Virus record (IMG/VR): IMGVR_UViG_3300026518_000006
Span: 124,001-188,000 of that record
Length of the DNA: 64,000 bases
Reading direction: 5' to 3' (one strand)
Translations under genes and position numbers: made by a program
Notes under the pieces: generated by a model
Seen by the model: the letters and a program-made list of their open reading frames with translations, nothing else
Database searches by the model: none
Told to the model about the DNA's origin: nothing
In this document: in pieces, positions 1,343-34,040 of the stretch
How the letters are laid out: every line of letters starts with the position of its first letter
Numbering within the stretch: the first letter of the stretch is position 1

Positions 1343-4300
1343 CTATTGCTTCTCATTGATATTTATAATATCATCACCCTCTTTCAATTCATCACAACGA
1401 ATCCAAATCTCTTCGCCATTTCTATAGACAAGTAATTTGTGATTGTAGGTGAATTCATAAGTATTTCCATCTTCAAATTCAATTTCTATAACAGGTTGTT
1501 TTCCGTTATACCAAATGCGGTTTACTTCACTTTCTCCGTTTAATGTAGGTACTTTTATTGCGTCTATACCTATCCATTGCGGAACATTCAACTCTTCTAT
1601 TTTTCTGTAGTCTATATTTTGTTCTTCAAGAATATCATAAATAGATTTATTGCCGTCTGTTGTTTTCATTTTATTATGACCACTTTGACAGTTTGGTGCA
1701 GTAGCCAATAATAGGAAATTTCTAATCCCTTTTTCTTGAATTTTTTTAGACATTTCAGACCACTTGAAACCATTTAGGCTCTCTTTATCAAGTTGTTTGG
1801 TATTTTTTCCGAACATTTTAGAATAATCGGCTTTATCAAATAAAGGATAAGCACCTTTTTTCTCTGCAAGTTGAACACTTCTCTCATAACAATACCAAGC
1901 GATTTTTTCGTAAACCTTTTCAAGCTCGTCTAAGTCTTCAGGCTTCTCATAAGATAATTTATTATAAGCCATCCAATCACCTGTGCCCAACACTCCAATA
2001 CCAACATTTCTAAGAAGTTTTGATGAATTTTCAGCTTCTTTTACGGGCATTGTTCCTGTTTCAATACTTGCATCCATCATATCAACAGCGTTGTAGCAAA
2101 CTCTCTTCAATAGTTTATCTTCAGGGTCGTTTACAATTAATCCCAAATTGATACTCAAAAGATTACAACTGTGGTATAGCCCATCACTTTCTGTACTCAT
2201 AACTCCATTTTTGTAGCTTTGAACCCACTCGGTAGGTGCTTTAGTAACACTAAACGACTCCGTACAATTCATAGTCATAACACCATTAAACATTAATGTA
2301 TGGTTTTTTGGTTCATTACCACAATAAGTTGCTCCTCTCAACCCTGTTCTATCTATATTTTTAACGGTAACAAATCTAATTGCACTTCTATTATATTCTC
2401 TCATAGTAGGCATAACTCTATAAGCTTTATATCCTAAATCTAATAGTTTGATGCACTCAGAACCTGCAATTAATAATCTATATAGAGGTTTAACCGTGTA
2501 TTCTTTTTTATCAGAAGACCCGTTATTTAGAGGCAATTTTCTTTCGCCTCCATTATGTACTTTTTGTACTTTAGAATTAATACCCATTTCTTGTAAGAAT
2601 AACATTAAATTATTAATGAAAATTTCATTAACAGATGCAAATTGGATGCTTTCACTGCCTTTATCGTTTGTTAGAGTACCATCACTATCCATAATACCTG
2701 CTAACCATTTTAACCGACTTTCTAAAGTGTAATCAGAAGTAGGAATAAAAAATCTATCTTTTAATAATCTTGTGTAACTAATGGTAGTTCTATTTTGGGC
2801 TTCATCTTCATTAAATGAAGTATAACCACTAAAGTTATTCACTAAAGCTCTTTTCTCGTGATACAAATAAATTCTTTGTATTCCATTGTTATCTTGAGAC
2901 CCATCCCCTGAAAAAAACCCATTCTCATAAGCCAAAGGTAGCACCTTGTCCCCACTTAAAACAGGCAAATCGAATTTGGCAAGTCTGTCACCTACACTCA
3001 ATTCTTCAGTTCTCTTAATAATTGGAGCTTTTCTGCTGTCATCCTGTACGACTAACCAACGGTGCGCTAATGTGGCATTTATCGTTTGATTATTTGATAA
3101 AGAAACTGTGACTAATTCATCATCATCACTTGTTTTGAAAAGCTCACTCATAGACCATTCGGTACCGTTCCATACTTCAATAGTTTGACCCGATACAGAT
3201 TCAATGTCCACATAACCTTGTTTGGTAAGAATTTTGGTATCACCTGATACACAAAGGTTGGCACTATTAGCGATTAAATCTTCACCTTTCAGGTAGTTAC
3301 ATAGATTTAGATTGTCTTTATGTGTAATATAAAAGTCGCCTGTTTCAACCCAAATTCTCAGAAACTCTTTCCAAAGTGCTTTTGCATTTTCCTTTTTGCA
3401 GTTTGTTAGTGTGCCTTTTTCGCATAAATCATAGATGGTTTCTTGTGCTTTATACAGCTCTTCATCAATCAAAGAAACAATATCAATCCCTGTTTTTGTT
3501 TTCACTTCATAACTATCAAAGAGATATACATCTTTGTTTTTTAAAACAGCATCCACAAAATAATCATCCACTACTACTTGTGGGAACAAGTCAAAACACT
3601 TATTTCTCAAGTCACCTTGTGTTTCGGATTTCATTTCAATAAAGCTATGAATATCACCGTGCCACCAATCCAAAGCAGGAGTAATAGCACCTTTTCGGAT
3701 TCCTCTTTGGTTTACCGCTACTGCAATATCATTGATTATTTTAGCCCATCTGATGATATTGTTGGCATTTGGGATATTGTCTGAGTACGAACCTTCAGGT
3801 CTTAAACCACCTAAATAAACTCCAATTCCGCCACCCTCTTTGGAGATTTTAGCCATATCCTGCCAAGTTTTTGTAATACTCTCAATATTGTCTAAGGTAG
3901 GAACAATAAAACAGCTACCTACATTACCACCTTCTCTTCTGAGATTTGATTTAAATGGTGTTGCTAATGAGATATACATTCTCTGTAGCATAGTGAAATA
4001 TTCTTTTGTCTTTTTAACTCTTTCACTTTCATCTTCAATGCCACCTAAAATCATAGACGAAGCCATATCAGAAAATTGAGGGTATTCAATAACTCCTCTT
4101 GAATTTTTTAGAATATACTTTGAGCGAAGACTTAACACCTGAGCAATATTCATATCAAAGTCGTACTTCGGGTTAATAGCCTTTTTGATTGTCTTTATAT
4201 CCTCTTCTGAAAAAGGCTTCATAATATCTTTTCTGTAATGATTTGTTCTGACCGCATATTTAATATACTCATCAAATTGGTCATATTCAAATTTTGTATT

Positions 4301-4573
4301 TTTATATACTTGTCTATGGAGTTGGTACATTGATAATCTACCTGCGACAATAGACATCTCAGGATGGTCTTGGTCTATCATTGATGTAGCTGTAGAAACT
4401 AATAAATCTTGAATATCAGAGGTTTTCATATTGTTTTTAAAATTCAGCGTTAGCTTTGCTTCCAACTCAAGTTGATTTTCTTTTAATCCTGTGTATGCGA
4501 ATTCAAGTTGTTTTTTAATTTTACTATTATCAAACGGTTTTTTTGAACCATCTCTTTTAATTACTGTTTTCAT
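1343..4573 (-). CDS. nrdA: Class Ia ribonucleotide reductase alpha subunit, N-terminal fragment with ATP cone, cis intein and terminal IntN
   Basis: ATP-cone start (VIKRDG), GSCF, ANL|C..N|CTE, GIGVLG, LLATAPN. Confidence 0.95.
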   Translation of the reverse strand: MKTVIKRDGSKKPFDNSKIKKQLEFAYTGLKENQLELEAKLTLNFKNNMKTSDIQDLLVSTATSMIDQDHPEMSIVAGRLSMYQLHRQVYKNTKFEYDQFDEYIKYAVRTNHYRKDIMKPFSEEDIKTIKKAINPKYDFDMNIAQVLSLRSKYILKNSRGVIEYPQFSDMASSMILGGIEDESERVKKTKEYFTMLQRMYISLATPFKSNLRREGGNVGSCFIVPTLDNIESITKTWQDMAKISKEGGGIGVYLGGLRPEGSYSDNIPNANNIIRWAKIINDIAVAVNQRGIRKGAITPALDWWHGDIHSFIEMKSETQGDLRNKCFDLFPQVVVDDYFVDAVLKNKDVYLFDSYEVKTKTGIDIVSLIDEELYKAQETIYDLCEKGTLTNCKKENAKALWKEFLRIWVETGDFYITHKDNLNLCNYLKGEDLIANSANLCVSGDTKILTKQGYVDIESVSGQTIEVWNGTEWSMSELFKTSDDDELVTVSLSNNQTINATLAHRWLVVQDDSRKAPIIKRTEELSVGDRLAKFDLPVLSGDKVLPLAYENGFFSGDGSQDNNGIQRIYLYHEKRALVNNFSGYTSFNEDEAQNRTTISYTRLLKDRFFIPTSDYTLESRLKWLAGIMDSDGTLTNDKGSESIQFASVNEIFINNLMLFLQEMGINSKVQKVHNGGERKLPLNNGSSDKKEYTVKPLYRLLIAGSECIKLLDLGYKAYRVMPTMREYNRSAIRFVTVKNIDRTGLRGATYCGNEPKNHTLMFNGVMTMNCTESFSVTKAPTEWVQSYKNGVMSTESDGLYHSCNLLSINLGLIVNDPEDKLLKRVCYNAVDMMDASIETGTMPVKEAENSSKLLRNVGIGVLGTGDWMAYNKLSYEKPEDLDELEKVYEKIAWYCYERSVQLAEKKGAYPLFDKADYSKMFGKNTKQLDKESLNGFKWSEMSKKIQEKGIRNFLLLATAPNCQSGHNKMKTTDGNKSIYDILEEQNIDYRKIEELNVPQWIGIDAIKVPTLNGESEVNRIWYNGKQPVIEIEFEDGNTYEFTYNHKLLVYRNGEEIWIRCDELKEGDDIININEKQ
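1346..1690 (-). other. Split intein N-half (IntN, 115 aa) of nrdA
   Basis: Starts CQSG after APN, block B FTYNHKLL, ends at the stop codon with no block F or G. Confidence 0.88.
2267..3253 (-). mobile_element. Cis-splicing intein (329 aa) with LAGLIDADG endonuclease, at the thiyl-radical Cys of NrdA
   Basis: CVSGDTKIL start, ATLAHRW block B, GFFSGDG and LAGIMDSDG motifs, ends NGVMTMN|C. Confidence 0.93.
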
Positions 4574-4670
4574 ATAGCCTCTTTAGTTAAGTATTTTGAT
4601 TGTATTATATAGTGGTAATTTGAAGCAAGTCTTAAAACCTATACTTTAGTACATCAAAAAGAAAGAAAAC

Positions 4671-14907: not shown

Positions 14908-15309
14908 TTAGATGGTGCCTAAGATTTCTCTAATTTTTCGAAGCTGTTCTCTCGCTCTTCTAACGGCAAACGGGTCATTCGGGTCTAGTTTGGAGCCTTT
15001 ATGAAATCCGGGAAGAAGTCTAATAGGAACCTCATCGATTGGTATTCCTACTGTTTCAGGATTTTCTGTGATGTTGTGTTTTGAAGCTCTTTGATTTTCT
15101 TCTAAAATTTCTTTATTTTTCTTAACAACTTCCTTAGTTCTAACAGGTTTTTTGGGTTCTTTTACCTCTTCTTTGACCTCTTCTTTGACCTCTTCTTTGA
15201 CCTTTTTAGGTCTCCCTCTACGCTTTGGTTTAGTTTCTGTTTTTTCAGTCGCCTCAATACTCTCTTCAGATTGTATTGAAGACTCTGTTTTTTTGGTTGT
15301 TTCGGACAT
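14908..15309 (-). CDS. Charged low-complexity protein (EEVK repeats)
   Basis: ORF coupled to the Hsp20 gene. Confidence 0.55.
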   Translation of the reverse strand: MSETTKKTESSIQSEESIEATEKTETKPKRRGRPKKVKEEVKEEVKEEVKEPKKPVRTKEVVKKNKEILEENQRASKHNITENPETVGIPIDEVPIRLLPGFHKGSKLDPNDPFAVRRAREQLRKIREILGTI

Positions 15310-15782
15310 TAAAATACCTTTTTGGTTTTATTTATAGGTTCAGCAAGTATAAACGAAATAGTCAAGATTCCATTTTCAAGTGTTACATCTACTTCCCCAT
15401 CATATGCTTCTTTTGGGATTAACACCTTTGTTTCAAATGGTTTTTTTTCAAACTGTTTTATGGCGTATACTTCATTCATATCATTTTGTGGCTGTTCGGG
15501 GGTTCCGACAATATATGTGATATAAGAATTATCCTCAGCTTTTAACTCAACACTAATTTCATCTTTTGTAAAACCTGTTGCTTGAACCTCAATAAACATA
15601 TTTTTTTCGCCAATTTTTGAAACATTTATAGACGGCATATTTTTTCTCCATTTTGTTTTATCTAAAGTTTCATCTATGATTTCATCTAATGATTTGTATC
15701 TTTTTGCAGGCAATCCATCTTGGTCTTCGAATATTTTTATACCCCAAGTGTCGAAGAAATCTTCAATAAACTTATCTCTCAT
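15309..15782 (-). CDS. Small heat-shock (Hsp20/alpha-crystallin) protein
   Basis: SINV...IEVQATGFTKDEISVEL...LENGILTISF. Confidence 0.75.
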   Translation of the reverse strand: MRDKFIEDFFDTWGIKIFEDQDGLPAKRYKSLDEIIDETLDKTKWRKNMPSINVSKIGEKNMFIEVQATGFTKDEISVELKAEDNSYITYIVGTPEQPQNDMNEVYAIKQFEKKPFETKVLIPKEAYDGEVDVTLENGILTISFILAEPINKTKKVF

Positions 15783-15863: not shown

Positions 15864-17321
15864 TTAATACCAATAAAATACTTTATTGCCACTATCAAAA
15901 ATTTGTCTATACCCATTATCGAACATATTTTGAAGTGCTGTTTTGTTTTCATCGAAATCAAAATCCTTAATATCTTTTAATTTATGCTTTTGAAACTTTT
16001 GTCTGCTATACAAGATATATGAATTGTGTTTAAAGAAAAAGAAATTTTTATCAGAATTATGACTAAAGAAAAACCCAAGAGTCTGATATAAATTTCCATC
16101 TGACCATCTTCGATTAGCATATGAAATTAAACTTCGTCCAATATGTTTTTTAAATCTATTTAATAGCTTGGAGGCACCACCTATAACAACTGTGTTCAAT
16201 TTTGTGCAAAACCTAACCAACTCATAATCTGCTTTTTTGTTAAATCTATTTTTAGAAAAAGTCATCACTGAAACCAACTTATTATTATAGAACAGCCCGT
16301 AATTTATCGAAGAGTGACTTCCGCCTTGCAGGTGATTATCTTCACAAAAATAAAAAGCATCTTTAGAACTAATCTCTTTAATTTCTGTATCTCTTGCATA
16401 TATTCTGTTATCAGTCTTATTTAGTCTATTTTTTATTACACTCTTCCACTTTTCTTTATTAAGAATCCACTCATTTTCAAAAATGTGTAAAAGTTGTATT
16501 CCGTTTTCTTCACAGACATCAGTTTTATGTTTATGTTTATTGGGGTTGAAATGATTTAAATTGTTCGGAAATGTTGACCCTTTTGAATGAAAGGTCAATC
16601 CATCGTATTCGATGGCTAAATTATATTCAGGTATGTATATGTCCAACTCAAAACCCAAGTGCATATCTCTTTCTATAATATTCTCTACCCCTATATCGGA
16701 TAGAAAGGATATAATCTCTTTCTCTGCATTAGATTGTTTATTGGAACATTTTGAACATCCTTGACCATTTAGATGAGCGTTTGGTTCCATTAAAAACTTT
16801 CCGTGAGTTGGACACAATATCTCAATTTTTTCTTTGCTATGTTTATATTCACTCACATATTGGTATTTGTACTGATGTTTTTTATTAAAATCTTCTACTG
16901 CTTGATTGTGGTCTTTTTTTGAATGATTGTTTCTTATAAGGTTGGCACATTTTGGACACCCAGACCCATTTTTATGGTTTTTGGGTGTCGGAAAAAAACT
17001 ACCGTGTATTTTACAAGTTACTTCGACAGGTGTTTTCATATTAATAAAATTTACTTTATCGTATGAGTATTTTTCACCGTGTACTTTTTTAAATTGTTCG
17101 ATTACGGTTTCAGTGGTGTACTTAGAGGATTTGTTGCATTTGCTACAACCTGCTCCTCTCATATGATGGTTTGGAGTCTGAGGAAACTCCCCGTGTATAG
17201 GACATATTATAATCATTGGGGTGCGGGTGTCCACTATACTATCTTCAATATATGTGTATTTATTATTGTGCTTTTCATGACACTTATTTAGTATTTCGGT
17301 TTTTGATAATTTCTTACTCAT
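15864..17321 (-). mobile_element. Hef-like homing endonuclease
   Basis: Three CPxHG..HxxGxGCxKC repeats, ELDIYIP..LAIEYDG..H nuclease motif, and C-terminal ELVRF..GGASKL domain. Confidence 0.8.
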
Positions 17322-17355: not shown

Positions 17356-18477
17356 TTAATCAAAAGCACCACTATTAATTTTTCGCATAGCATCAAAAGC
17401 TACATCAGGGTCATATGAACTCATATTTTGAAGCATACGGTCTTTCGTATAATCATCACTGCCATCATCAAACCCACCATCTGTGTCTAATAATGAATAA
17501 TAATCTGCTGTTTTTACACCATCTTCATCTTCTTCAGTATCTAAATCTATATTCTTTCTTAATACATCTAAAAATAAATCAAAATCATCAAACGCTTTTA
17601 TGTGCATAAATGGGGCAAAAATAATAGCTAAACTCATTATCATATCATCGTGATAGCCCTCTTCAGCTTCATATTTTTTCTTCACATTATCGCTTTTAAT
17701 GAAGTTAAAAAATTCGTTGATAGTATCTCTGTCTTGAACTATTAATTTCCCCTCTTCTATAAAAATCTTCAACATATTGATAATAAGAGGTCTTGATTTT
17801 ACAGTAGTTCTAAATCCGTAATATTTTTTATATTTTTTGTCTCCGTCATCTCTATCCCGATACATATTTGGATATTCGTAGTTGAGGTATAAAATATCGG
17901 CTACACTTTGTCCTGCACCTTCATTATTTTCGATAACTAAAAAAGCTTCATTATAATAAAGCCCTAATGTTTCAATATATTCAGGCATAACAAGATAATC
18001 TACATCTAATTTAGCTGAAGCAACCTGTATAAATGGAAATTTTGTAATATCAACCACTTGAATACTAAAACTATCTATCCCTTCTTTTGATGGGTCAATA
18101 CCAATGATGTAATTATGTCCTTTTATAGGTTTTTCATAAATATTAATCCCGCTGAATATGGTATCTTTAGCGACAGGTTCTTGTGGCACCATTAACTTCA
18201 ATCTTTCTGTACTAATCAGTGTTGAGGCAGAGCCAAGAAATTCACACGCCTCTGTTTGTGCGAAGAATTGTGCTCCATTTCTTGCTATTGTTTGTTTCTT
18301 GTACTCTTGAGGGGATAAAGGATTTCCTTTTTTATCAAAATGAGGAACTTCAGTCCAACTCGCTGTTACCAATCGGTGCCCGCTTTTGGACTTAAAAATA
18401 TTATATTTTACTGTATATGTCCCGTCAGGGTTTTTAATTATCTCTTTAATATCATTTATAGATTTTATTTTAAGCAT
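17356..18477 (-). CDS. gp17: Large terminase fragment 4 (nuclease domain)
   Basis: CEFLGSASTLI, IIGIDPS, IENN, HDDMIMSLAI. Confidence 0.92.
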   Translation of the reverse strand: MLKIKSINDIKEIIKNPDGTYTVKYNIFKSKSGHRLVTASWTEVPHFDKKGNPLSPQEYKKQTIARNGAQFFAQTEACEFLGSASTLISTERLKLMVPQEPVAKDTIFSGINIYEKPIKGHNYIIGIDPSKEGIDSFSIQVVDITKFPFIQVASAKLDVDYLVMPEYIETLGLYYNEAFLVIENNEGAGQSVADILYLNYEYPNMYRDRDDGDKKYKKYYGFRTTVKSRPLIINMLKIFIEEGKLIVQDRDTINEFFNFIKSDNVKKKYEAEEGYHDDMIMSLAIIFAPFMHIKAFDDFDLFLDVLRKNIDLDTEEDEDGVKTADYYSLLDTDGGFDDGSDDYTKDRMLQNMSSYDPDVAFDAMRKINSGAFD

Positions 18478-19100
18478 TATTCAACATCCATTATAATAGG
18501 GTGACGCTCTATAGTATGAAATTCTTTATAAATTTCTTCCAACGAAAATTCACCTAAAGCATCAATTTCGATTGTATCATCTTCAGACAACACAACTTCT
18601 TCGTCTTTAAAATTGATATTTTTAGCACCCTCCACTAGTTGAAAAAAGTGGTTCATACCATTAGCTGTAGAAGTGTTTATAACCTGTTTAAATATCAATG
18701 AGTTCATAGTAGGTATTACAGCATCGATAAAGTCATCCCAATCTTTTGATTTTATATAACCCGCTTCGTCAGTGTAGATAATATTGCAATTATGAGACTC
18801 AATCATATTTGTTGTATATGTGTGCCCCCTTACACCCACAACATCATAAAACTCAAAAGCCCCCTCTTTGTGAGTAATATTTTTTATTACACCATTGGAT
18901 ATTTTATCACCAACTTTTAAATTTTTGGCTTGTCTAAAAATTTTTCCTGATTTTGATTTTCCTACTAATAATCTATGGTCTTCGGTACATTTTAAACTAC
19001 TATTGTCAGTTTCAATATAGTAAAGTATTTTTTTATTAATTCGTCTAACTGTTTCAAAATCTTCATACCCTCTCTCAGTTTTTATCATATAATCGTTCAT
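18477..19100 (-). CDS. gp17: Large terminase fragment 3: IntC2 (104 aa, 18789-19100) plus Walker B and coupling motif
   Basis: CTEDH block B, ends ESHN|CNIIYTDEAG, STANGMNHF. Confidence 0.9.
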   Translation of the reverse strand: MNDYMIKTERGYEDFETVRRINKKILYYIETDNSSLKCTEDHRLLVGKSKSGKIFRQAKNLKVGDKISNGVIKNITHKEGAFEFYDVVGVRGHTYTTNMIESHNCNIIYTDEAGYIKSKDWDDFIDAVIPTMNSLIFKQVINTSTANGMNHFFQLVEGAKNINFKDEEVVLSEDDTIEIDALGEFSLEEIYKEFHTIERHPIIMDVE

Positions 19101-19971
19101 AAAAAGCTCCTATTAGATTTTCTTTTGTTATAGATGATTTCCAATTTTTAGATGAATTTAATTCTGATGGCAACATCTCTAAATTAATGATATTTCCTAT
19201 TATATAAGGAGGGATACCTTCCTTAAACCCCATAATTTTTGAAAATTTATGGTCTATATTATAAAAACCTTTTCCTCTCCCTCTTTTGTTATAGTTCGTC
19301 AAGGTATATAAATCTTGAGCTTTAGTTACTTTATCCACTTCTCTACAGTATAATTCATAATCTGAGAGTTCACTTTCTTTTACCCAAAGTCCGTTAATTT
19401 CCTTTAATTTTCTATAATTTTTTACTCTACATTTTATTTTCCCACAAGTAGGTCTATACCCTTGTCCATATGATAAATATTTTCTTGGTTTACAACAATA
19501 TTCACATTTTGGCTCTTCTTTCATATCATTCATAAATAAATATATATTTTTAGATATATTATTTGTTATTTTAGGTATAGAACCATAGATATCCATTATT
19601 AACTGATTTTTATTATGGTAGTTATCGGGTTTTATTTTGGATATGTAATTTTTAAGGTCATTTACGGATTTATCGAGTTTATTTTCAAGTTTCGGTGCAT
19701 TTAAATCATCCATTTGGCATTTGTGTGAGCAATATTTAGCATAACCATCTGATATATTTTTAAATTTTGTTTTTGCACCACATTTACATATTGGGGGTAT
19801 TAAAATGTTATGTTTTATAATATATAGCAACTCATTCAATTTATTTGTAGTTGGTGGAATTTTTGCATTTTCTAATAATTTTTGATAGTGAATTTTATAG
19901 AACTCAGATTTTGATGTTAATTTTCCAAAGCTTTCAAACTCTAACAACTCAATAATTGACAGTTCTTTCAT
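19075..19971 (-). mobile_element. Free-standing HNH homing endonuclease with Zn-ribbon repeats
   Basis: NIDHKFS...NLEML..LNSSKN motif and two PxC..C..F..GY..C repeats. Lies between IntN2 and IntC2. Confidence 0.75.
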
Positions 19972-20659
19972 ATAACTCTTTTATAGTAATTTTTTCTTCT
20001 TTTAATGTTTTTTTATTTATAACTTCTACCGTAGTATCAGGAGATACACAAGTATATCCACGAAAGCTGTCACTTGATGGGCTGTCTGTCATAATCCTTG
20101 TGCCGTTTTCAAACTCGATATTTGATTTGTTCCACACCGATATCCCATTCATAAGCCATATTGGAAGCTCTAAGAAAACCTTTTTAATTTTATCCAATAC
20201 TTCACGGGCTGTGGACGGTTTATTGGCTACAATCCCAATATTTATAGCAGTATCGTGAAACATAGCTCTCCACAACAGATAGTTGCCCACTGTAACCGTA
20301 TTATGGCTAAGAATATCATTAGTGTAATAAAGATTATCCCCACTAACACTTAAATCATACATTTCTTCTGAGTACCCTAAATCTATTACTTTCGTTACTT
20401 TTGAATCGCCTTTTTTTGTATTTAAGATTTTTCCTAAACTATTTTTTGCAAATACTTCTTGAAAGTCATTAGTAATTAAAATATGGTCATCAGCACACTT
20501 TATTTTTAGTCCATTTTGCAGGTGCACTTCATATAATCTGTATTTAACAGTTTTATTAGTTTTAGTTATATCTCTCCAACCATCGTGGCTTTCGACTTGC
20601 CAATCATTGACATCAAATTGTTCTGTAAATTTTCGGTTTATTTTATCTGATAGTTTCAT
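19949..20659 (-). CDS. gp17: Large terminase fragment 2: IntC1 (120 aa), 83-aa extein, IntN2 (33 aa)
   Basis: CADDH block B, LSHN|TVTVGN...DSFRGYT|CVSPDTTVEV. Confidence 0.92.
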   Translation of the reverse strand: MKLSDKINRKFTEQFDVNDWQVESHDGWRDITKTNKTVKYRLYEVHLQNGLKIKCADDHILITNDFQEVFAKNSLGKILNTKKGDSKVTKVIDLGYSEEMYDLSVSGDNLYYTNDILSHNTVTVGNYLLWRAMFHDTAINIGIVANKPSTAREVLDKIKKVFLELPIWLMNGISVWNKSNIEFENGTRIMTDSPSSDSFRGYTCVSPDTTVEVINKKTLKEEKITIKELYERTVNY

Positions 20660-21918
20660 TATTTTAGCCCATATTTATTTTTAAAATTTGTAGTGAAATT
20701 TTCCAAATCTTTTTTATTTATTTTTAATATGTTTTGTAATATATCTTCATCAAAACATTCAGTAGAAGAAAAATGATTATACTTCTTCGTTACTCTATTA
20801 TTCTTCGATAAAATATATTGCTCTTTATAGAAAGCTTTATCGTAAGGCATTTTCTCTGTATAGATAACATTATATGATAATCCGTTTTTGACTTCAAATA
20901 TTGACTGACTCCCCCACCTTGATATAATTCCTTGAGATGTTATGCCTATTTTATAAAAAACATCTCTTGAATTATAAAACTTAATATAATAAAGAATAGT
21001 TTCTGTATTTTTTGCCCAATAGTTTTTCTTTCTTATCAAATCTATACTCCATCCTATGTGCTCACCTTTCCCTTTATCTCTATTAATTCTCTCTAATTCT
21101 TCTTTTGGTTTTGATTGTAGAGTTTTTTGCCACTTTTGTTGTCTTTGATTAAATATAATTAATCCTTCTTCACCATATCTCTCAATACATTTCTCTAAAG
21201 AAAAAGTGCTTTGTCGTTCTGATAATAATCTTTTAGCTTCATTTTCATTATAACCTCGTTTTAAATAATACTCTAAAGTACAATCATTATTACCATTTTC
21301 CTTATTCGATTTCGATATTTTAGAATGAACTTCATTTATTTTTTGCTGTTTTTCTTCCTCTGTTAAACCTTGATATTTTATAAAGTTTTTAGAGCCACTT
21401 GAATACTTTCCACCGTGATTTTTGGCAGGATTATTATCTGAAGTGAACCCCTTTACTTGTTTGTCAATATTATGTAGTCCATATCGTACAATAGTTCCTA
21501 ATAGTCCATTTGATTTCTTTACATTTAATATATATCGTTGTCTTTCAAGGAACTTTGTTTTCATCCCATCAGATATAAACTTAGCAAAATTATCTATCTT
21601 CATATATTCGCCTTTATTTAAATAATATAGGCACTTTTTTAACTCTCTGAATTGAGATAATGTAGGAAATTTATTTAAGTTACTATAAAAGGATTTTTGA
21701 TTGAATAACCACCTTAAATCTTTTTCTTTATATGGTTTACCTTTGTTATCCAATTTAATTTTCAATTTAATTTTCAATTTATCTATTTCATTTTTATGAA
21801 CTAAATTAGTTGTTTTATTATAAGGAATGTATTCAACTTCTGAAAAGTCTATATATGGTATTTTTGAAACTCTTATATAGTTTGGCGAATAATGAAGTCT
21901 TCTGTTTACTTTGCTCAT
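20659..21918 (-). mobile_element. Free-standing homing endonuclease, GIY-YIG/T5orf172-like C-terminal domain
   Basis: LYYIKF...FYKIGIT....R...EQ motif and RYGEEG repeat. Lies between IntN1 and IntC1. Confidence 0.7.
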
Positions 21919-22480
21919 TTATCATTTCGTGGAATTCACCAATCGGCATTTTCACTAATTCTCCTGTGTGTTTGTTTTTTATATTTATAATAGTTGAAAA
22001 GTCGTTGCATTTACCGCTCTGTCTCGGATAAAGTACAACTAAATCCTCTAAACTCAGGAGCTCATCTTCTAAAAATACTTGGTATCTTCTTGGTTCAGGT
22101 CTTGCCAATCCTGTTTTTGTAGTGATGAAACAATAATTACTTCTGAAATATTTAAATGATTTCTTACACTTTTCTATTTCTATTTTGTGCAGAGTATTTA
22201 AATCTAATTCAGTTTTTTCACGCTTTAAAACACGAATACCATTGTATGATATTTTATTGCCGTATTTATCGGTATAATAACCATTTTCATTTCTTGGAGG
22301 TGTTAATAATAACAACAAGCCATCGTGTTCTTCAGGAGTCCAATCATAGGTATTCTGCACAAATTTTAAAAATGTTTTTTCCTCTAATAATTGGTCTAAT
22401 AAATCATAGATGTATTCATCTTCAGTGAGGTCTTTTACTTTAGTCAGTAGTTTTCTGTATTTTTTATCTAAATTAGTCAT
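21833..22480 (-). CDS. gp17: Large terminase fragment 1: N-terminus to Walker A plus short IntN1 (from 22009)
   Basis: EIEKCKKSFKYF..NY, RRYQ, PRQSGK|CNDFSTIINI. Confidence 0.9.
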   Translation of the reverse strand: MTNLDKKYRKLLTKVKDLTEDEYIYDLLDQLLEEKTFLKFVQNTYDWTPEEHDGLLLLLTPPRNENGYYTDKYGNKISYNGIRVLKREKTELDLNTLHKIEIEKCKKSFKYFRSNYCFITTKTGLARPEPRRYQVFLEDELLSLEDLVVLYPRQSGKCNDFSTIINIKNKHTGELVKMPIGEFHEMINEQSKQKTSLFAKLYKSFKNTIYRLFRS

Positions 22481-30885: not shown

Positions 30886-31800
30886 TTAAATATTGGGTAG
30901 AGTGACTTCTTTAGTTAAAATGGGGTGTCCTTCTGATACATAGTACATTTCTCTTTCATAAAAGTGTTTTAAACTATAGGTGTCTTTAACATAAGTGAAC
31001 ACATCTACTAAATCAAAAACATATACATTATCACCTTTTTCTTTATGTAACCTCATAATTCTACCCATAGCTTGAAGTACTAGAGTATATGATTTTGTTG
31101 AGCTCAAAAACACAAGGTTCTTTAGTCTTGGGATGTTGATACCTGTACTCAAAACATTATATTGTCCTATTACAATAGCATTCTCACAAGTATTAAGGTA
31201 AAGTCTAATCTGCTCTCTAACACTTGATTTTGTGTTTCCACTCATAAAGAAAACATTGTGTTTTTTCATAAACTCAAAGTCAGATTTTCTTTTATTGGTA
31301 AGCTTCTCACCTGTTAAACTTTCAAAAGTATCTTCCCCGTGTGCAGTGACAGCGTATAAGGCTACTGTAACCCCTTTAAGTTTTTCTAAAAACTGTTTTA
31401 CAAACAACTGTCTTGATTTGCTTTCTCTTATGAATTTTGTTTCTTCCTGATACTTCATACCACTTTTGGTTTGGTTTCGTGGATGTGTTAAGAAAATAGC
31501 CATAATAGTTGTGTCTGTTAATAAGCCCATCTCAATTAGTTGTCTTGCATTAACAATTCTTTCGGGTTTTCCCAATGCTTGCTCTAATAACATAGCATCT
31601 TCTTCTATGATAGGCATAGAGCCAGTCATACCCAATTTTATCTCACAAGGTTGCTTTAATATAGACTGAAGTACTTCAGCTTTAGCTTGGTGACAATTAG
31701 ACACTAAAATGTTATTGGCATAATAATTGTGGTTGTTTTCTATATGTAAATTATAAGTATCACCTTGAAACTCAACCTTTTTTATGGACTTTATCTTCAT
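30886..31800 (-). CDS. uvsW: UvsW helicase C-terminal fragment (35-aa IntC at 31696-31800 plus extein)
   Basis: MKIKSIKKV...ILVSN|CHQAK, GMTGS, STGINIP, QAMGRIMR. Confidence 0.92.
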   Translation of the reverse strand: MKIKSIKKVEFQGDTYNLHIENNHNYYANNILVSNCHQAKAEVLQSILKQPCEIKLGMTGSMPIIEEDAMLLEQALGKPERIVNARQLIEMGLLTDTTIMAIFLTHPRNQTKSGMKYQEETKFIRESKSRQLFVKQFLEKLKGVTVALYAVTAHGEDTFESLTGEKLTNKRKSDFEFMKKHNVFFMSGNTKSSVREQIRLYLNTCENAIVIGQYNVLSTGINIPRLKNLVFLSSTKSYTLVLQAMGRIMRLHKEKGDNVYVFDLVDVFTYVKDTYSLKHFYEREMYYVSEGHPILTKEVTLPNI

Positions 31801-32857
31801 TCTTACCCTTTAGTTTTTCCAATTTTTGTATCGCATTTGTTACTTTATCGGTATTTTCATCATCCAATTTAATATTAGCGAATAACTCTTTTATATTGCT
31901 TAAATTTTTAATCAGATAATCCTCTGTTATAATTTTATATGAGTAATTATTTTCTTCACACCAAACCAAAGCACTATCTTCTTTTGCTATATTTCGAGCA
32001 TTGAGTATTAGTGATTTTGGTTTTATTTCGAATATTATATTATGTTTGTTATCTGTAAAATCCACAATATATGTGTGTATACTATCTTCAAATAAATATG
32101 GTATTCTAGTGGTTTCATATAGTGTATTTGGGTTCAACAAATAAAACATAAATTCCCAAGAGCTCCTAAAATTAAAATTGCCAAATTTTATTCTGCTTCT
32201 CGACCAAGAGTTGGTAATACACGGGGTAAATTCTCCGCTTGCAATTTTTGATTTCATTATTATAGAGTTATGTTTGGCTATCTTCTTTTTTGTCTCTTTT
32301 GACATTTTATGAGCAGGGTTGTTTTTTCTCATCCGCTCAGAACATAATAATTGTCTACATTTTTCATTACAGGTTTTTCTATTCAATGATGAAGATTGTG
32401 CCCTTTTAATTTTATTACCACAATAATCGCAATATAGTGGGTCTATTTCATCAATATATTCTATTCTTGACAATCTAAGCAAGTTCGGAAATTTTAAATC
32501 TGCTCCAACAAAAAGTAAATATTTCATATAATTATCATTATCATCTATAAATGAATATTTAGGGGTAGTTGTTGATTTATACTTTGGTAAATTATTTTTT
32601 AATGTTTCGTATGTAACATTTTCTACAATCCTACCACTATAATCCCAATTTCCAAGAACTAGCTTTAAGTCATAAATGTCATCTTTAAAAGCATTGAATA
32701 TAAAGGCATATTTTATCGTTTTGTTGCCTTTATATTCATAAAAGAGCGTCCTTAAATCTTCACGATATATTAAAATTTGTTTTATTATTTTTGATTTTAA
32801 TGGTTTTGACAGCTTGTTTGGATTAAGTGTTTTTAAATATTTTTTATAATCATCCAT
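31772..32857 (-). mobile_element. Free-standing endonuclease, TnsA-like PD-(D/E)xK domain
   Basis: FRSSWE...YE..IPY...YIVDF...EIKP, with CDYC..C..C and NUMOD3-like segments. Lies between the uvsW IntN and IntC. Confidence 0.75.
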
Positions 32858-32860
32858 ATC

Positions 32861-33817
32861 TTATTTATAGGGCAGAAGCTCATCAGTTAACACCAACTCG
32901 TCTACTCTAACATAACCTCGTTGTGTAAATACCTTATGATTACCTGTGATATATAGCTTTCCGTTATCTGTTTCTATCTCATACATCTGTTCGTTTGATA
33001 TATTTTTATGTGTTTTTAGTACTTGATTGTATTCATTTTGTTTGGTAGTTTCATTGTATGTCATAACTAAATCTCCTTCAGTTATACTGCCGATTGGCAC
33101 ATCTCCATTAATAGTTTTAATCAAAGTATCACCTCTTAGACACTCATCAACCAAGATAGCGTCATATAGTCTTACATCTTTCATAACTTTGTTCAAGCTT
33201 TGCCAAGTGGTGATTATATAGGGTTTATCCAACGCTTTATCATCATTCTCACCACCAATTAGTTTAATACTGTCAAGCATCTCTTTTGGGGCATTGTAAT
33301 CTTTAAAATCTTGGAACATTTGAGATGTTAATCCGATTGTGGGGACTACTAATATAGTCGGGATATCGTGGTCGAAAAAGTATTTTAAAACCAAATAAGC
33401 AACCATTGACTTGCCACCACCTGTGGCAATAATATCCAATTTATTTCTACTTCTAATAAGGCTTAGAAAGCCTTTTAGTTGGTGTTTATAGGGGGTAAAG
33501 GGTAGGGTAGGGATAACGCTTTTCAAGAAGTCTATAGCATCATCACGCTCTAATGGCGGTAATAATTCAACTTTATCGAATTCAATATTTTCTATAAGAC
33601 GCTCTTTAAAACCTTTTTCAACTTTGAAATATTTACCATCTTTATAATTCTGAGCTTGATAAAATCGAGTATATCCATCATCTTTGCCCATTTGAACTCT
33701 AGGTTCGTGCTCTGAATTTAGTCTTTTGGCTCTAAGTAGCTTATCAATCTTGAATACAGTGTCTCTATTATTAGTGAATAGGTTAAGATGATGTTTCGCC
33801 TCATTTAATATTGTCAT
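32861..33817 (-). CDS. uvsW: UvsW helicase N-terminal fragment plus IntN (93 aa, 32864-33142)
   Basis: PYKHQ, ATGGGKS, VVPT, TTWQSL, LVDE|CLRGDT, ITGNHKV block B. Confidence 0.92.
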   Translation of the reverse strand: MTILNEAKHHLNLFTNNRDTVFKIDKLLRAKRLNSEHEPRVQMGKDDGYTRFYQAQNYKDGKYFKVEKGFKERLIENIEFDKVELLPPLERDDAIDFLKSVIPTLPFTPYKHQLKGFLSLIRSRNKLDIIATGGGKSMVAYLVLKYFFDHDIPTILVVPTIGLTSQMFQDFKDYNAPKEMLDSIKLIGGENDDKALDKPYIITTWQSLNKVMKDVRLYDAILVDECLRGDTLIKTINGDVPIGSITEGDLVMTYNETTKQNEYNQVLKTHKNISNEQMYEIETDNGKLYITGNHKVFTQRGYVRVDELVLTDELLPYK

Positions 33818-33827
33818 ATAGTTTCCA

Positions 33828-34040
33828 TTATATTGTGTATTCGGGATTATCCTCAAGCCATTTAATATAAGGCTTTTTTAGTACGATTTCGGTAGACCCT
33901 CTTTTTCGTATATTTCCTTTGATTTTTACTTTATTGTCGATAACATCAGTAACTACACCTTCATTAAACCAGTAGCCGTCTTTGCCTGTGTATAAAACAG
34001 TATCGCCAATCTTTACATTAATCCCGAAATAGTCTTTCAT
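33828..34040 (-). CDS. Small SH3-like protein with tag PEYTI
   Basis: DYFG..VKIGDTV pattern. Confidence 0.6.
   Translation of the reverse strand: MKDYFGINVKIGDTVLYTGKDGYWFNEGVVTDVIDNKVKIKGNIRKRGSTEIVLKKPYIKWLEDNPEYTI

What the first reader, a model, noticed from the sequence alone, without database searches (positions are those of the whole stretch)
18390..18620. Third terminase break carries a catalytically dead intein-like tail
Seen: against T4 gp17 (NHFY...KSGF...W), about 47 extra aa end F3 and about 29 extra aa begin F4. The F3 tail VLSEDDTIEI...FSLEEIYK aligns with IntN2 CVSPDTTVEV...ITIKELYE but has Val in place of Cys1. F4 starts MLKIKSI like the IntCs in this window but has no block F or HN. 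The ORFs overlap by 1 nt (TAATG) with no endonuclease between them. Inference: a former split intein kept as a non-covalent clasp joining ATPase and nuclease halves; alternatively a -1 frameshift joins F3 and F4.
Basis: inference. Interest (0 to 1): 0.7.

Follow-up and report, generated by a model that had tools for sequence, protein, structure and literature searches.

The report
Two-piece terminase with intein-derived tails
In this hydrothermal-vent phage, the third break in the DNA-packaging enzyme is an old, conserved gene split whose two loose ends look like leftovers of a homing-endonuclease/split-intein cassette that can no longer splice, so the two pieces must work as separate, non-covalently joined proteins.

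Summary
F3 (18477-19100, minus strand) ends with 47 extra residues. F4 (17356-18477) begins with 29 extra residues. Stop and start overlap as TAATG, and no endonuclease gene lies between them.

The break is not specific to this genome. At least 20 metagenomic relatives have the same two-gene large terminase (TerL), many with no inteins at all. Frame relations vary, and the F4 frame has a stop two codons before its ATG, so a frameshift is excluded.

The tail matches the N-fragment of the atypically split inteins of these TerL genes, in register (profile-profile P = 3e-5). Position 1 is never Cys.

The head is weaker evidence. Its first 20 residues resemble the start of the C-fragment only weakly (P about 3e-3). 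It is a beta-hairpin, and blocks B, F and G are absent, so neither a HINT fold nor splicing is possible.

Two findings change the picture:
- In relatives L036 and L022, a homing-endonuclease gene sits exactly in this break.

Best reading: the ends of a dead intein/endonuclease cassette now form the two halves of a small insertion module in a two-subunit TerL. The clasp function is untested, because the co-fold gave no answer.

The parts
18480..18620 (-). F3 tail: 47 residues (F3 aa 161-207) with no counterpart in T4 gp17 or in insert-free relatives
   Evidence: AF2 on the homologous intein-free N piece predicts two short strands plus a helix here, pLDDT about 65-70.
18510..18593 (-). Intein-N-fragment-like core of the tail (aa 170-197, VLSEDDTIEI...EFSLEEIYKEFHTI), with Val170 at the Cys1 position
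   Evidence: hhalign against 40 N-fragments: P = 6.5e-5 (14 tails) and 3e-5 (18 tails); 0 of 100 shuffles reach the score; reversed control gives no match. Not detected by Pfam or by profile-sequence HMMER.
18480..18503 (-). Last 8 tail codons, dual-use: they hold the weak Shine-Dalgarno-like GGA and lead-in to the F4 start. Protein sequence here is nearly unconstrained between subgroups.
   Evidence: pN 0.5-0.8. Relatives have GGAG/GGAGG 7-12 nt before the C-piece start.
18475..18479 (-). TAATG stop/start overlap (F3 stop TAA, F4 start ATG). The F4 frame has TGA two codons upstream of the ATG.
18391..18477 (-). F4 head: 29 residues forming a beta-hairpin around NPDG (strands aa 10-15 and 21-25)
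   Evidence: Non-synonymous divergence 0.20-0.33, the same as the adjacent enzyme core. Homologous to the hairpin of contiguous inserts in unsplit TerLs (P = 3.3e-4 and 1.2e-3).
17356..18390 (-). Rest of F4 (C piece): strand SKSGHRLVTASW (gp17 about 304-315), second segment of ATPase subdomain II, hinge, and RNase-H-like nuclease domain. Cys78 is an empty intein site.
18621..18788 (-). F3 extein segment (aa 105-160: CNIIYTDEAG...NGMNHFFQLVEGAK), holding the Walker B and coupling-motif region of the ATPase
18789..19100 (-). C-fragment of split intein 2 (F3 aa 1-104, ends ESHN|C), apparently intact
   Evidence: match to the engineered consensus intein CatC, PDB 6dsl_B, E 8e-6
19075..19971 (-). 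Free-standing endonuclease-like gene in break 2. It belongs to the same family as the gene that occupies break 3 in relatives L022 and L036.
   Evidence: (39% identity, E 2e-15)
19949..20659 (-). F2: C-fragment of intein 1, extein, and N-fragment of intein 2 (CVSPDTTVEV...)
21833..22480 (-). F1: TerL N-terminus through Walker A (RQSGK), then N-fragment of intein 1

Best explanation
The third break is an old, conserved fission of the T4-type large terminase gene into two genes.

How the pieces are made: after the two real split inteins join F1, F2 and F3, the phage has an N piece of about 340 aa and a separate C piece (F4, 373 aa). The C piece is translated from its own start codon, coupled to termination of the N piece at TAATG. 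No peptide bond is ever formed between them.

What the loose ends are: they are the ends of a mobile cassette that once sat here, and still sits here in some relatives. That cassette is a free-standing homing-endonuclease gene flanked by pieces of an atypically split intein.
- The tail is a Cys-less copy of the about 30-aa N-fragment.
- The head begins like the C-fragment but keeps only a beta-hairpin. Everything catalytic is gone.

How they probably work: tail (strand-strand-helix) and head (hairpin) together make one small insertion module in a surface loop of the ATPase domain. Unsplit relatives have the same module in one piece. The two polypeptides are probably held together by refolding of this module and by the C piece supplying the strand and subdomain-II segment that the ATPase domain lacks.

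Shown: the split, its conservation, separate translation, absence of catalytic residues, tail-to-N-fragment similarity, the endonuclease in the break in relatives, and contiguous homologues.
Inferred: the cassette origin, and the clasp or complementation role.
For: Conservation:
- 10 C pieces (366-377 aa) all start with the head, and 11 or more N pieces (334-348 aa) all end with the tail.
- Intein-free two-gene pairs occur in L012, L013, L015, L016 and L034.
- More distant split lineages are L006, L023, L029 and L036.
- The window clade is monophyletic (support 0.998).
- The genome holds a single C-piece locus.

No frameshift:
- Overlaps are 1, 4, 8, 11, 14 and 23 nt, falling in two different frame relations.
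- The window has a stop in the C frame two codons before the ATG.
- Shine-Dalgarno-like motifs precede the C start.

Selection: head pN is 0.20-0.33, equal to the core (0.16-0.31). Tail core pN is 0.35-0.56.

Intein likeness: tail versus N-fragment P = 3e-5, in register. Independent tails give P = 2.4e-4. Head versus the C-fragment start gives P = 2.7e-3.

Cassette:
- In L036 the order is N piece with tail, then a DUF7487-type endonuclease gene, then C piece with head.
- In L022 the same gene type overlaps the C-piece start by 4 nt.
- The split P0041 and the unsplit L030 are 76% identical just after the hairpin but only 27% identical in it. The window and P0041 hairpins are 52% identical against 31% in the flank.
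- Insert and split states are scattered on the tree.

One module: the contiguous versions in L030 and P0069 join the N-fragment-like part to the hairpin by a few residues.
Against: - Co-folding of tail and head gave no answer, so physical pairing is unproven.
- Pfam and profile-sequence HMMER do not link the tail to inteins. The similarity appears only in profile-profile comparison and covers a generic strand-strand-helix pattern.
- The head similarity is marginal, and its NxDGTYTV motif also recurs in unrelated repeat proteins.
- No relative with a working intein (Cys1 plus a full C-fragment) at this site was found.
- Tail and head charges are not complementary: tails are -1 to -12 and heads +3 to -5.
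- Contiguous inserts could be ancestral, with the split arising later by point mutation.
- The structure search of the contiguous module found no HINT-like fold.
Confidence: 0.6

Rival explanations
1. Ordinary subdomain, ordinary fission. The 50-90 aa insert is a lineage-specific TerL subdomain with no intein ancestry. In some lineages it was cut in two by a stop/start mutation or by an endonuclease gene landing in it. Its likeness to intein N-fragments is convergence of a strand-strand-helix motif.
For: - Unsplit TerLs carry contiguous inserts at the same loop (P0032, P0033, P0052, P0055, P0059, P0075, P0069, P0078, P0083, P0099, P0101, L030).
- The head is homologous to their hairpin.
- Profile-sequence searches find no intein signal.
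- The Atlas structure matches are generic alpha/beta domains.
Against: - Tail versus N-fragment gives P = 3e-5 in exact register, reproduced with independent tails.
- The tail HMM's weak non-family hits are nearly all true N-fragments.
- The split falls where atypical inteins are split.
- Class A unsplit inserts lack the N-fragment-like strands that their split relatives L023 and L006 have.
- The insert's patchy distribution among close relatives needs many exact gains or losses.
Confidence: 0.25
2. A programmed -1 or +1 ribosomal frameshift (or stop read-through) fuses F3 and F4 into one chain.
For: Only the 1-nt overlap itself.
Against: - The F4 frame has TGA two codons before its ATG, leaving no room to shift.
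- There is no slippery heptamer.
- Relatives overlap by 1, 4, 8, 11, 14 or 23 nt in different frames.
- L036 has a whole endonuclease gene and a 160-nt gap in between.
Confidence: 0.02
3. The tail and head are a working but non-canonical split intein that still splices.
For: Ser30 at the would-be +1 position is invariant.
Against: - Neither tail nor head has any Cys.
- No nucleophile at position 1 in 18 tails.
- No TxxH, no block F, no His-Asn.
- The head is 29 aa against 104-120 aa for the real C-fragments.
Confidence: 0.02
4. The break is damage: a decaying, non-functional terminase gene or an assembly error.
For: None beyond the gene being in pieces.
Against: - The junction is the same in independent runs and strains and in 20 or more diverged lineages.
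- The head is as constrained as the enzyme core.
- It is the only TerL C piece in the genome.
Confidence: 0.03

Closest known systems
Phage Aeh1 NrdA-a/NrdA-b: ribonucleotide reductase split by the mobE endonuclease and reassembled through tails that came with the mobile element (Crona et al. 2011, PMC3045599)
   Same: An essential T4-like phage gene is cut in two. Each piece gained a tail absent from insert-free homologues. A homing endonuclease is tied to the break. There is no RNA or protein splicing, and the pieces are translated separately. The authors themselves raised a degenerate split intein as a possible origin.
   Different: - Here the endonuclease is gone from the window's break, though present in relatives.
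- The split is conserved across a whole clade.
- The tails show measurable sequence likeness to intein fragments.
- There is no charge complementarity.
- Contiguous versions of the tails exist.
- Function of the tails is untested here.
Fractured genes with split inteins and free-standing endonucleases, including the gp17-like terminase with an intein split at an unusual point (Dassa et al. 2009, PMC2677866). The AceL-TerL and GOS-TerL atypical split inteins are cited from my own knowledge, not checked here.
   Same: Same host gene, same layout in relatives (piece, endonuclease gene, piece), and the same short-N/long-C split position. Breaks 1 and 2 of this window are ordinary members.
   Different: Break 3 has no Cys1, no C-fragment body and no splice-junction residues, so the pieces cannot be ligated.
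T4 topoisomerase gp39/gp60 split by the mobA insertion
   Same: A gene split linked to an endonuclease, with tail-like extensions on both products (as discussed in PMC3045599).
   Different: Different enzyme. No intein-like sequence has been reported there.
Engineered catalytically dead split inteins used as high-affinity pairing tags (my own knowledge, not checked here)
   Same: The idea that intein halves can hold two proteins together without splicing.
   Different: Those keep the whole HINT fold. Here only about 76 residues remain.

Membership tests
Intein (HINT protein-splicing domain) | Cys/Ser/Thr nucleophile at intein position 1 | tested here: not met
   Val170 in the window. Other, mostly hydrophobic residues, never Cys, in all 18 tails aligned.
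Intein (HINT protein-splicing domain) | Block B TxxH | tested here: not met
   Absent from tail and head. The real C-fragments of the window have it (CTEDH, CADDH).
Intein (HINT protein-splicing domain) | Blocks F and G ending in His-Asn followed by Cys/Ser/Thr | tested here: not met
   The head ends ...NIFK|SKSG. There is no HN. Ser30 is invariant but stands alone.
Intein (HINT protein-splicing domain) | Recognised by intein profiles, with a full HINT fold of about 130 aa or more | tested here: not met
   Pfam PF14890 hits only F3 aa 19-103 (the intein 2 C-fragment), not the tail or head, even at E up to 10. Tail plus head is 76 aa. The Atlas structure search of the contiguous homologue found no HINT.
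Intein (HINT protein-splicing domain) | Block A (N1) sequence pattern | tested here: met
   hhalign of tails against 40 N-fragments: P = 3e-5, probability 73%, in register.
Fractured gene with split intein (Dassa 2009) | Free-standing endonuclease gene between the two gene pieces | tested here: not met
   The window has a 1-nt overlap with nothing between. The feature is met in relatives L036 and L022 at this same break.
Fractured gene with split intein (Dassa 2009) | Complementary, splicing-competent intein halves on the two pieces | tested here: not met
   See the intein rows above.
Mobile-element-derived assembly tails (Aeh1 NrdA type) | Gene split relative to close homologues, with tails absent from insert-free homologues | tested here: met
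   The sister clade P0023-P0026, P0034, P0036 and others have 24-25 aa between GxNHF and W..VP, the same as T4.
Mobile-element-derived assembly tails (Aeh1 NrdA type) | Oppositely charged tails | tested here: not met
   Tails net -1 to -12; heads +3 to -5.
Mobile-element-derived assembly tails (Aeh1 NrdA type) | Tails required for assembly or activity | not testable with these tools
   Only one co-fold was allowed, and it gave no answer.
Programmed ribosomal frameshift | Open overlap window with a slippery site and a conserved frame relation | tested here: not met
T4-type large terminase (gp17) | Terminase_6N ATPase plus Terminase_6C RNase-H-like nuclease, alignable to gp17 structures | tested here: met

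The most novel reading that the evidence does not exclude
A mobile gene-splitting cassette made of an intein N-fragment-like tail, a homing-endonuclease gene and a C-fragment-start-like head homes into one loop of T4-type terminases. It never splices. Instead it supplies the two halves of a small self-complementing module, so the host enzyme survives as two subunits. After the endonuclease is lost, the halves either stay apart (this window) or fuse in frame, and the contiguous inserts of L030 and P0069 are such fused fossils. That would make it a natural non-splicing descendant of a split intein, kept as a protein-pairing device.
Probability: 0.3. Interest if true: 0.8.

Novelty: new variant of a known kind. 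Interest (0 to 1): 0.62.

Why it matters
- Large terminases are treated as single-chain motors. A whole clade of vent phages appears to run the motor as two polypeptides, cut inside the ATPase domain.
- It gives sequence-level support to an idea raised only as speculation for the Aeh1 reductase: that assembly tails on genes split by homing endonucleases can be dead split-intein ends.
- If the tail and head do pair, they are a natural, very small (about 47 + 29 aa), cysteine-free heterodimerising pair, of possible use as a protein tool.
- It is also a warning for annotation: a terminase in pieces is not necessarily broken, and not every piece boundary beside inteins is a splice site.

Tried and rejected
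- Tails-only co-fold (A2 + A3): score 0.19, below the mark, so no answer.
- AF2 of the N piece and C piece separately: low overall confidence (mean pLDDT 64 and 66). Used only for the secondary structure of tail and head.
They were resent without that row.
- Pfam at E up to 10 on tails and heads: only chance-level hits.
- ESM Atlas feature search on the tail: scores under 0.8, not informative.
- HMMER tail, head and N-fragment profiles against the six-frame genome: no second copy of the module, and no tail-intein cross hits.
- dN/dS: synonymous sites are saturated (pS 0.6-1.0), so only pN was compared.
- Charge-complementarity idea: rejected.
- The apparent 107-nt gap between the pieces in L015 is a run of N with duplicated flanks. 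The true junction is ATGA.
- L018 is a chance match to the hairpin motif in an unrelated small ORF.
- The metagenome scan added only three loci.
- Comparison of class C contiguous inserts with N-fragments was not significant.
- Literature searches found no earlier description of a two-gene TerL of this kind.

Full report
**1. The observation.**
On the minus strand the large terminase (TerL) gene is in four pieces:
- F1, 21833-22480
- F2, 19949-20659
- F3, 18477-19100
- F4, 17356-18477

Endonuclease-like ORFs lie in the first two breaks, at 20659-21918 and 19075-19971. At the third break the sequence reads GAA TAATG CTT, so the stop of F3 and the start of F4 share one base.

HMMER against solved T4 gp17 chains aligns F3 up to residue 157 with position 299 of 3ezk_A, and F4 from residue 27 with position 301.

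In gp17 terms the break lies at about residue 300-304. ATPase subdomain II is aa 1-58 and 314-353, and the hinge is 354-364 (PMC3074133). F4 therefore carries the strand that follows the NHFY helix, half of subdomain II, the hinge and the nuclease domain. The cut is inside the ATPase domain, not between ATPase and nuclease.

Contigs from other runs carry the identical junction: X3 and X5 with 0 differences, and X4 as a 95-99% variant, all from hydrothermal-vent metagenomes.

**2. The break is conserved, and it is not a frameshift.**
- A word-indexed search with F4 residues 1-110 returned ten C pieces of 366-377 aa, all beginning with the head.
- A search with the end of an intein-free N piece returned eleven N pieces of 334-348 aa (or intein-bearing fragments), all ending with the tail.
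- Contigs L012, L013/L014, L015, L016 and L034 show a plain two-gene TerL with no intein at all.
- Stop/start overlaps are 1, 4, 4, 4, 8, 11, 14 and 23 nt, giving two different frame relations.
- In the window the F4 frame has TGA two codons before its ATG.
- Relatives have GGAG-type motifs 7-12 nt before the C-piece start, lying inside the last tail codons.
- The genome has one C-piece locus.
- Synonymous sites are saturated, but non-synonymous divergence can still be compared. The head (0.20-0.33) equals the neighbouring enzyme core (0.16-0.31). The tail core is looser (0.35-0.56). The last eight tail codons are nearly free.

**3. Is it intein-like?**
The real inteins of this gene family are the atypically split kind already described for a gp17-like terminase (PMC2677866). 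F3's C-fragment matches the engineered consensus intein CatC, PDB 6dsl_B.

I collected 40 N-fragments and 38 C-fragments from the loci and proteins fetched.

*Tail.* The tail alignment matches the N-fragment profile:
- 14 tails: P = 6.5e-5.
- 18 tails: P = 3e-5, score 22.8, against 5.7 +/- 1.2 for 100 column shuffles. A reversed control found nothing.
- The match covers profile positions 3-32, so Val170 falls on Cys1.
- Four tails from other lineages (L023, L029, L034, L036) match on their own at P = 2.4e-4.
- The tail HMM's weak non-family hits are almost all true N-fragments, for example CVCFDTKIEIEGMGELKIGELYESL in P0080.

*Head.* The evidence is weaker:
- 21 heads against the C-fragment profile give P = 2.7e-3 (0 of 60 shuffles), always aligned to the first 20 residues of the C-fragment.
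- The window clade alone gives P = 0.023.

*Against.* Neither Pfam nor profile-sequence HMMER sees any of this. No tail has Cys/Ser/Thr at position 1. There is no TxxH, no block F and no His-Asn. Splicing is excluded, and 76 residues cannot make a HINT fold.

**4. The insert also exists in one piece.**
An exhaustive profile search (C-piece residues 1-95 against 1.84 billion representatives) found 90 TerLs. The distance from GxNHF to W..VP falls into these groups:
- 24-25 aa in most, as in T4 and in the window clade's sister group.
- 58-63 aa in P0032, P0033, P0052, P0055, P0059 and P0075.
- 72 aa in P0069.
- 81-92 aa in P0078, P0083, P0099 and P0101.

The head is homologous to the hairpin of these contiguous inserts (P = 3.3e-4 and 1.2e-3).

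Two unsplit proteins stand out:
- P0069 (945 aa, one ORF in L025) is 59% identical to the split C piece of L029 right through the hairpin. It keeps an N-fragment-like stretch just before it.
- L030 encodes an intein-free, unsplit 657-aa TerL whose insert reads ...ENIKIGAKNMTVQELYNL, then six residues, then QIDSVALNDNVYTV.... This is the same module with tail part and hairpin joined by a short linker.

It also shows that tail and head lie next to each other in one small module. The Atlas structure search for the P0069 insert returned compact alpha/beta domains and no HINT.

**5. The break is an endonuclease site in relatives.**
In L036 the gene is in five pieces, with three real split inteins. 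At our break the order is:
- an N piece ending in a Cys-less tail (...KNDLIQLKDGTEITVEEYY...),
- a 251-aa DUF7487-type endonuclease-like gene,
- a C piece beginning with the head.

In L022 a gene of the same family overlaps the C-piece start by 4 nt. That gene is 39% identical (E 2e-15) to the window's ORF in break 2.

Identities around the hairpin are discontinuous:
- The split P0041 (L022) and the unsplit L030 are sisters (support 1.0) and 76% identical in the 49 residues after the hairpin, but only 27% identical in the hairpin.
- The window and P0041 hairpins are 52% identical, against 31% in the flank.

On the tree, insert-free, contiguous and split states alternate among close relatives. 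These patterns fit a cassette that moves or is exchanged between TerL genes and brings its own ends. The counts are small, and the direction (fission of an old insert versus fusion of cassette ends) is not settled.

**6. Mechanism proposed.**
Shown:
- Two separate genes, with translational coupling signals.
- No possible splicing.
- A constrained head.
- A tail with an N-fragment pattern.
- Contiguous homologues.
- An endonuclease in the break in relatives.

Inferred:
- The N piece (after two trans-splicing events) and the C piece associate without a covalent bond.
- The association uses refolding of the tail/head module and the C piece's contribution of the SKSGHRLVTASW strand and the subdomain-II segment to the ATPase domain.

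AF2 gives strand-strand-helix for the tail (E315-318, E322-325, H326-337 of P0012, pLDDT about 65-70). It gives a hairpin for the head (E10-15, E21-25, pLDDT about 71). The SKSG...W strand is unconfident in the isolated C piece.

**7. Comparison with what is known, and verdict.**
Breaks 1 and 2 are ordinary fractured-gene split inteins. Break 3 works like the Aeh1 NrdA-a/NrdA-b case, where tails acquired with the mobE endonuclease are needed for assembly and where a degenerate intein origin was only suggested (PMC3045599).

Break 3 fails every defining test for an intein except the block-A pattern. It is not a frameshift site, not an assembly error and not a dead gene.

I found no earlier description of such a two-gene TerL.

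- Right: the tail is a dead intein-like sequence, and the pieces are separate proteins.
- Wrong: a HINT-like unit, the domain boundary, and the frameshift alternative.
- Incomplete: the module also exists unsplit, and the break is a homing-endonuclease site in relatives.

Noticed in passing
window 18243-18246 (Cys78 codon of F4): In run X4 a 95-99% identical strain carries about 1.33 kb extra DNA exactly at the QTEA|C78 site. The size fits an N-fragment + endonuclease + C-fragment cassette. L004, L006, L029 and L036 have an intein at this same site. This looks like a presence/absence polymorphism of a fourth intein cassette between near-identical strains.
   Followed up: partly
window 15864-17321 (-): A 485-aa free-standing HNH/Hef-like homing endonuclease gene (phrog_559, E 7e-138; zinc-ribbon repeats plus an MTES_1575-like nuclease) lies directly downstream of F4.
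   Followed up: partly
window 20659-21918 (-) and 19075-19971 (-): The ORFs inside breaks 1 and 2 have no Pfam hit but match phage endonuclease families (phrog_681; phrog_5104 and phrog_3339). The second belongs to the DUF7487-type family that occupies break 3 in L022 and L036.
   Followed up: partly
window 1346-4582 (-), 30889-31809 (-), 32864-33877 (-): Three other ORFs of the window hit my intein profile (E 3e-6, 2e-3, 1e-5). More fractured or intein-bearing genes probably lie in this genome.
   Followed up: no
L036 1168-7005: A relative has its TerL in five pieces. It has split inteins at the P-loop (GRQ|C), at Walker B (VVDE|C, with a GIY-YIG-like gene after it) and at QNYG|C (endonuclease fused to the C-fragment), plus the non-splicing break with its own endonuclease gene.
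   Followed up: partly
L015 1147-1253: The apparent 107-nt spacer between the N and C pieces is a run of N flanked by a duplicated ATTAGTATGAT, a scaffolding artefact. The real junction is an ATGA overlap.
   Followed up: yes
P0077, P0091, P0092, P0113, P0038 (hits): The hairpin motif (V/I)xNxDGTY(T/E)V recurs 5-13 times (more in P0038) in very large unrelated repeat proteins. Short matches to the head alone are therefore unreliable.
   Followed up: no
window 15309-15782 (-): A small heat-shock-protein-like gene (HSP20 by Pfam in the L013 counterpart) lies two genes downstream of the terminase, after the endonuclease gene; in relatives L013 and L014 it directly follows the terminase.
   Followed up: no
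L022 1-309: The first about 300 nt of this contig look different from the rest and encode no TerL N piece. The contig may be chimeric, so the N side of that endonuclease-bearing break could not be read.
   Followed up: no
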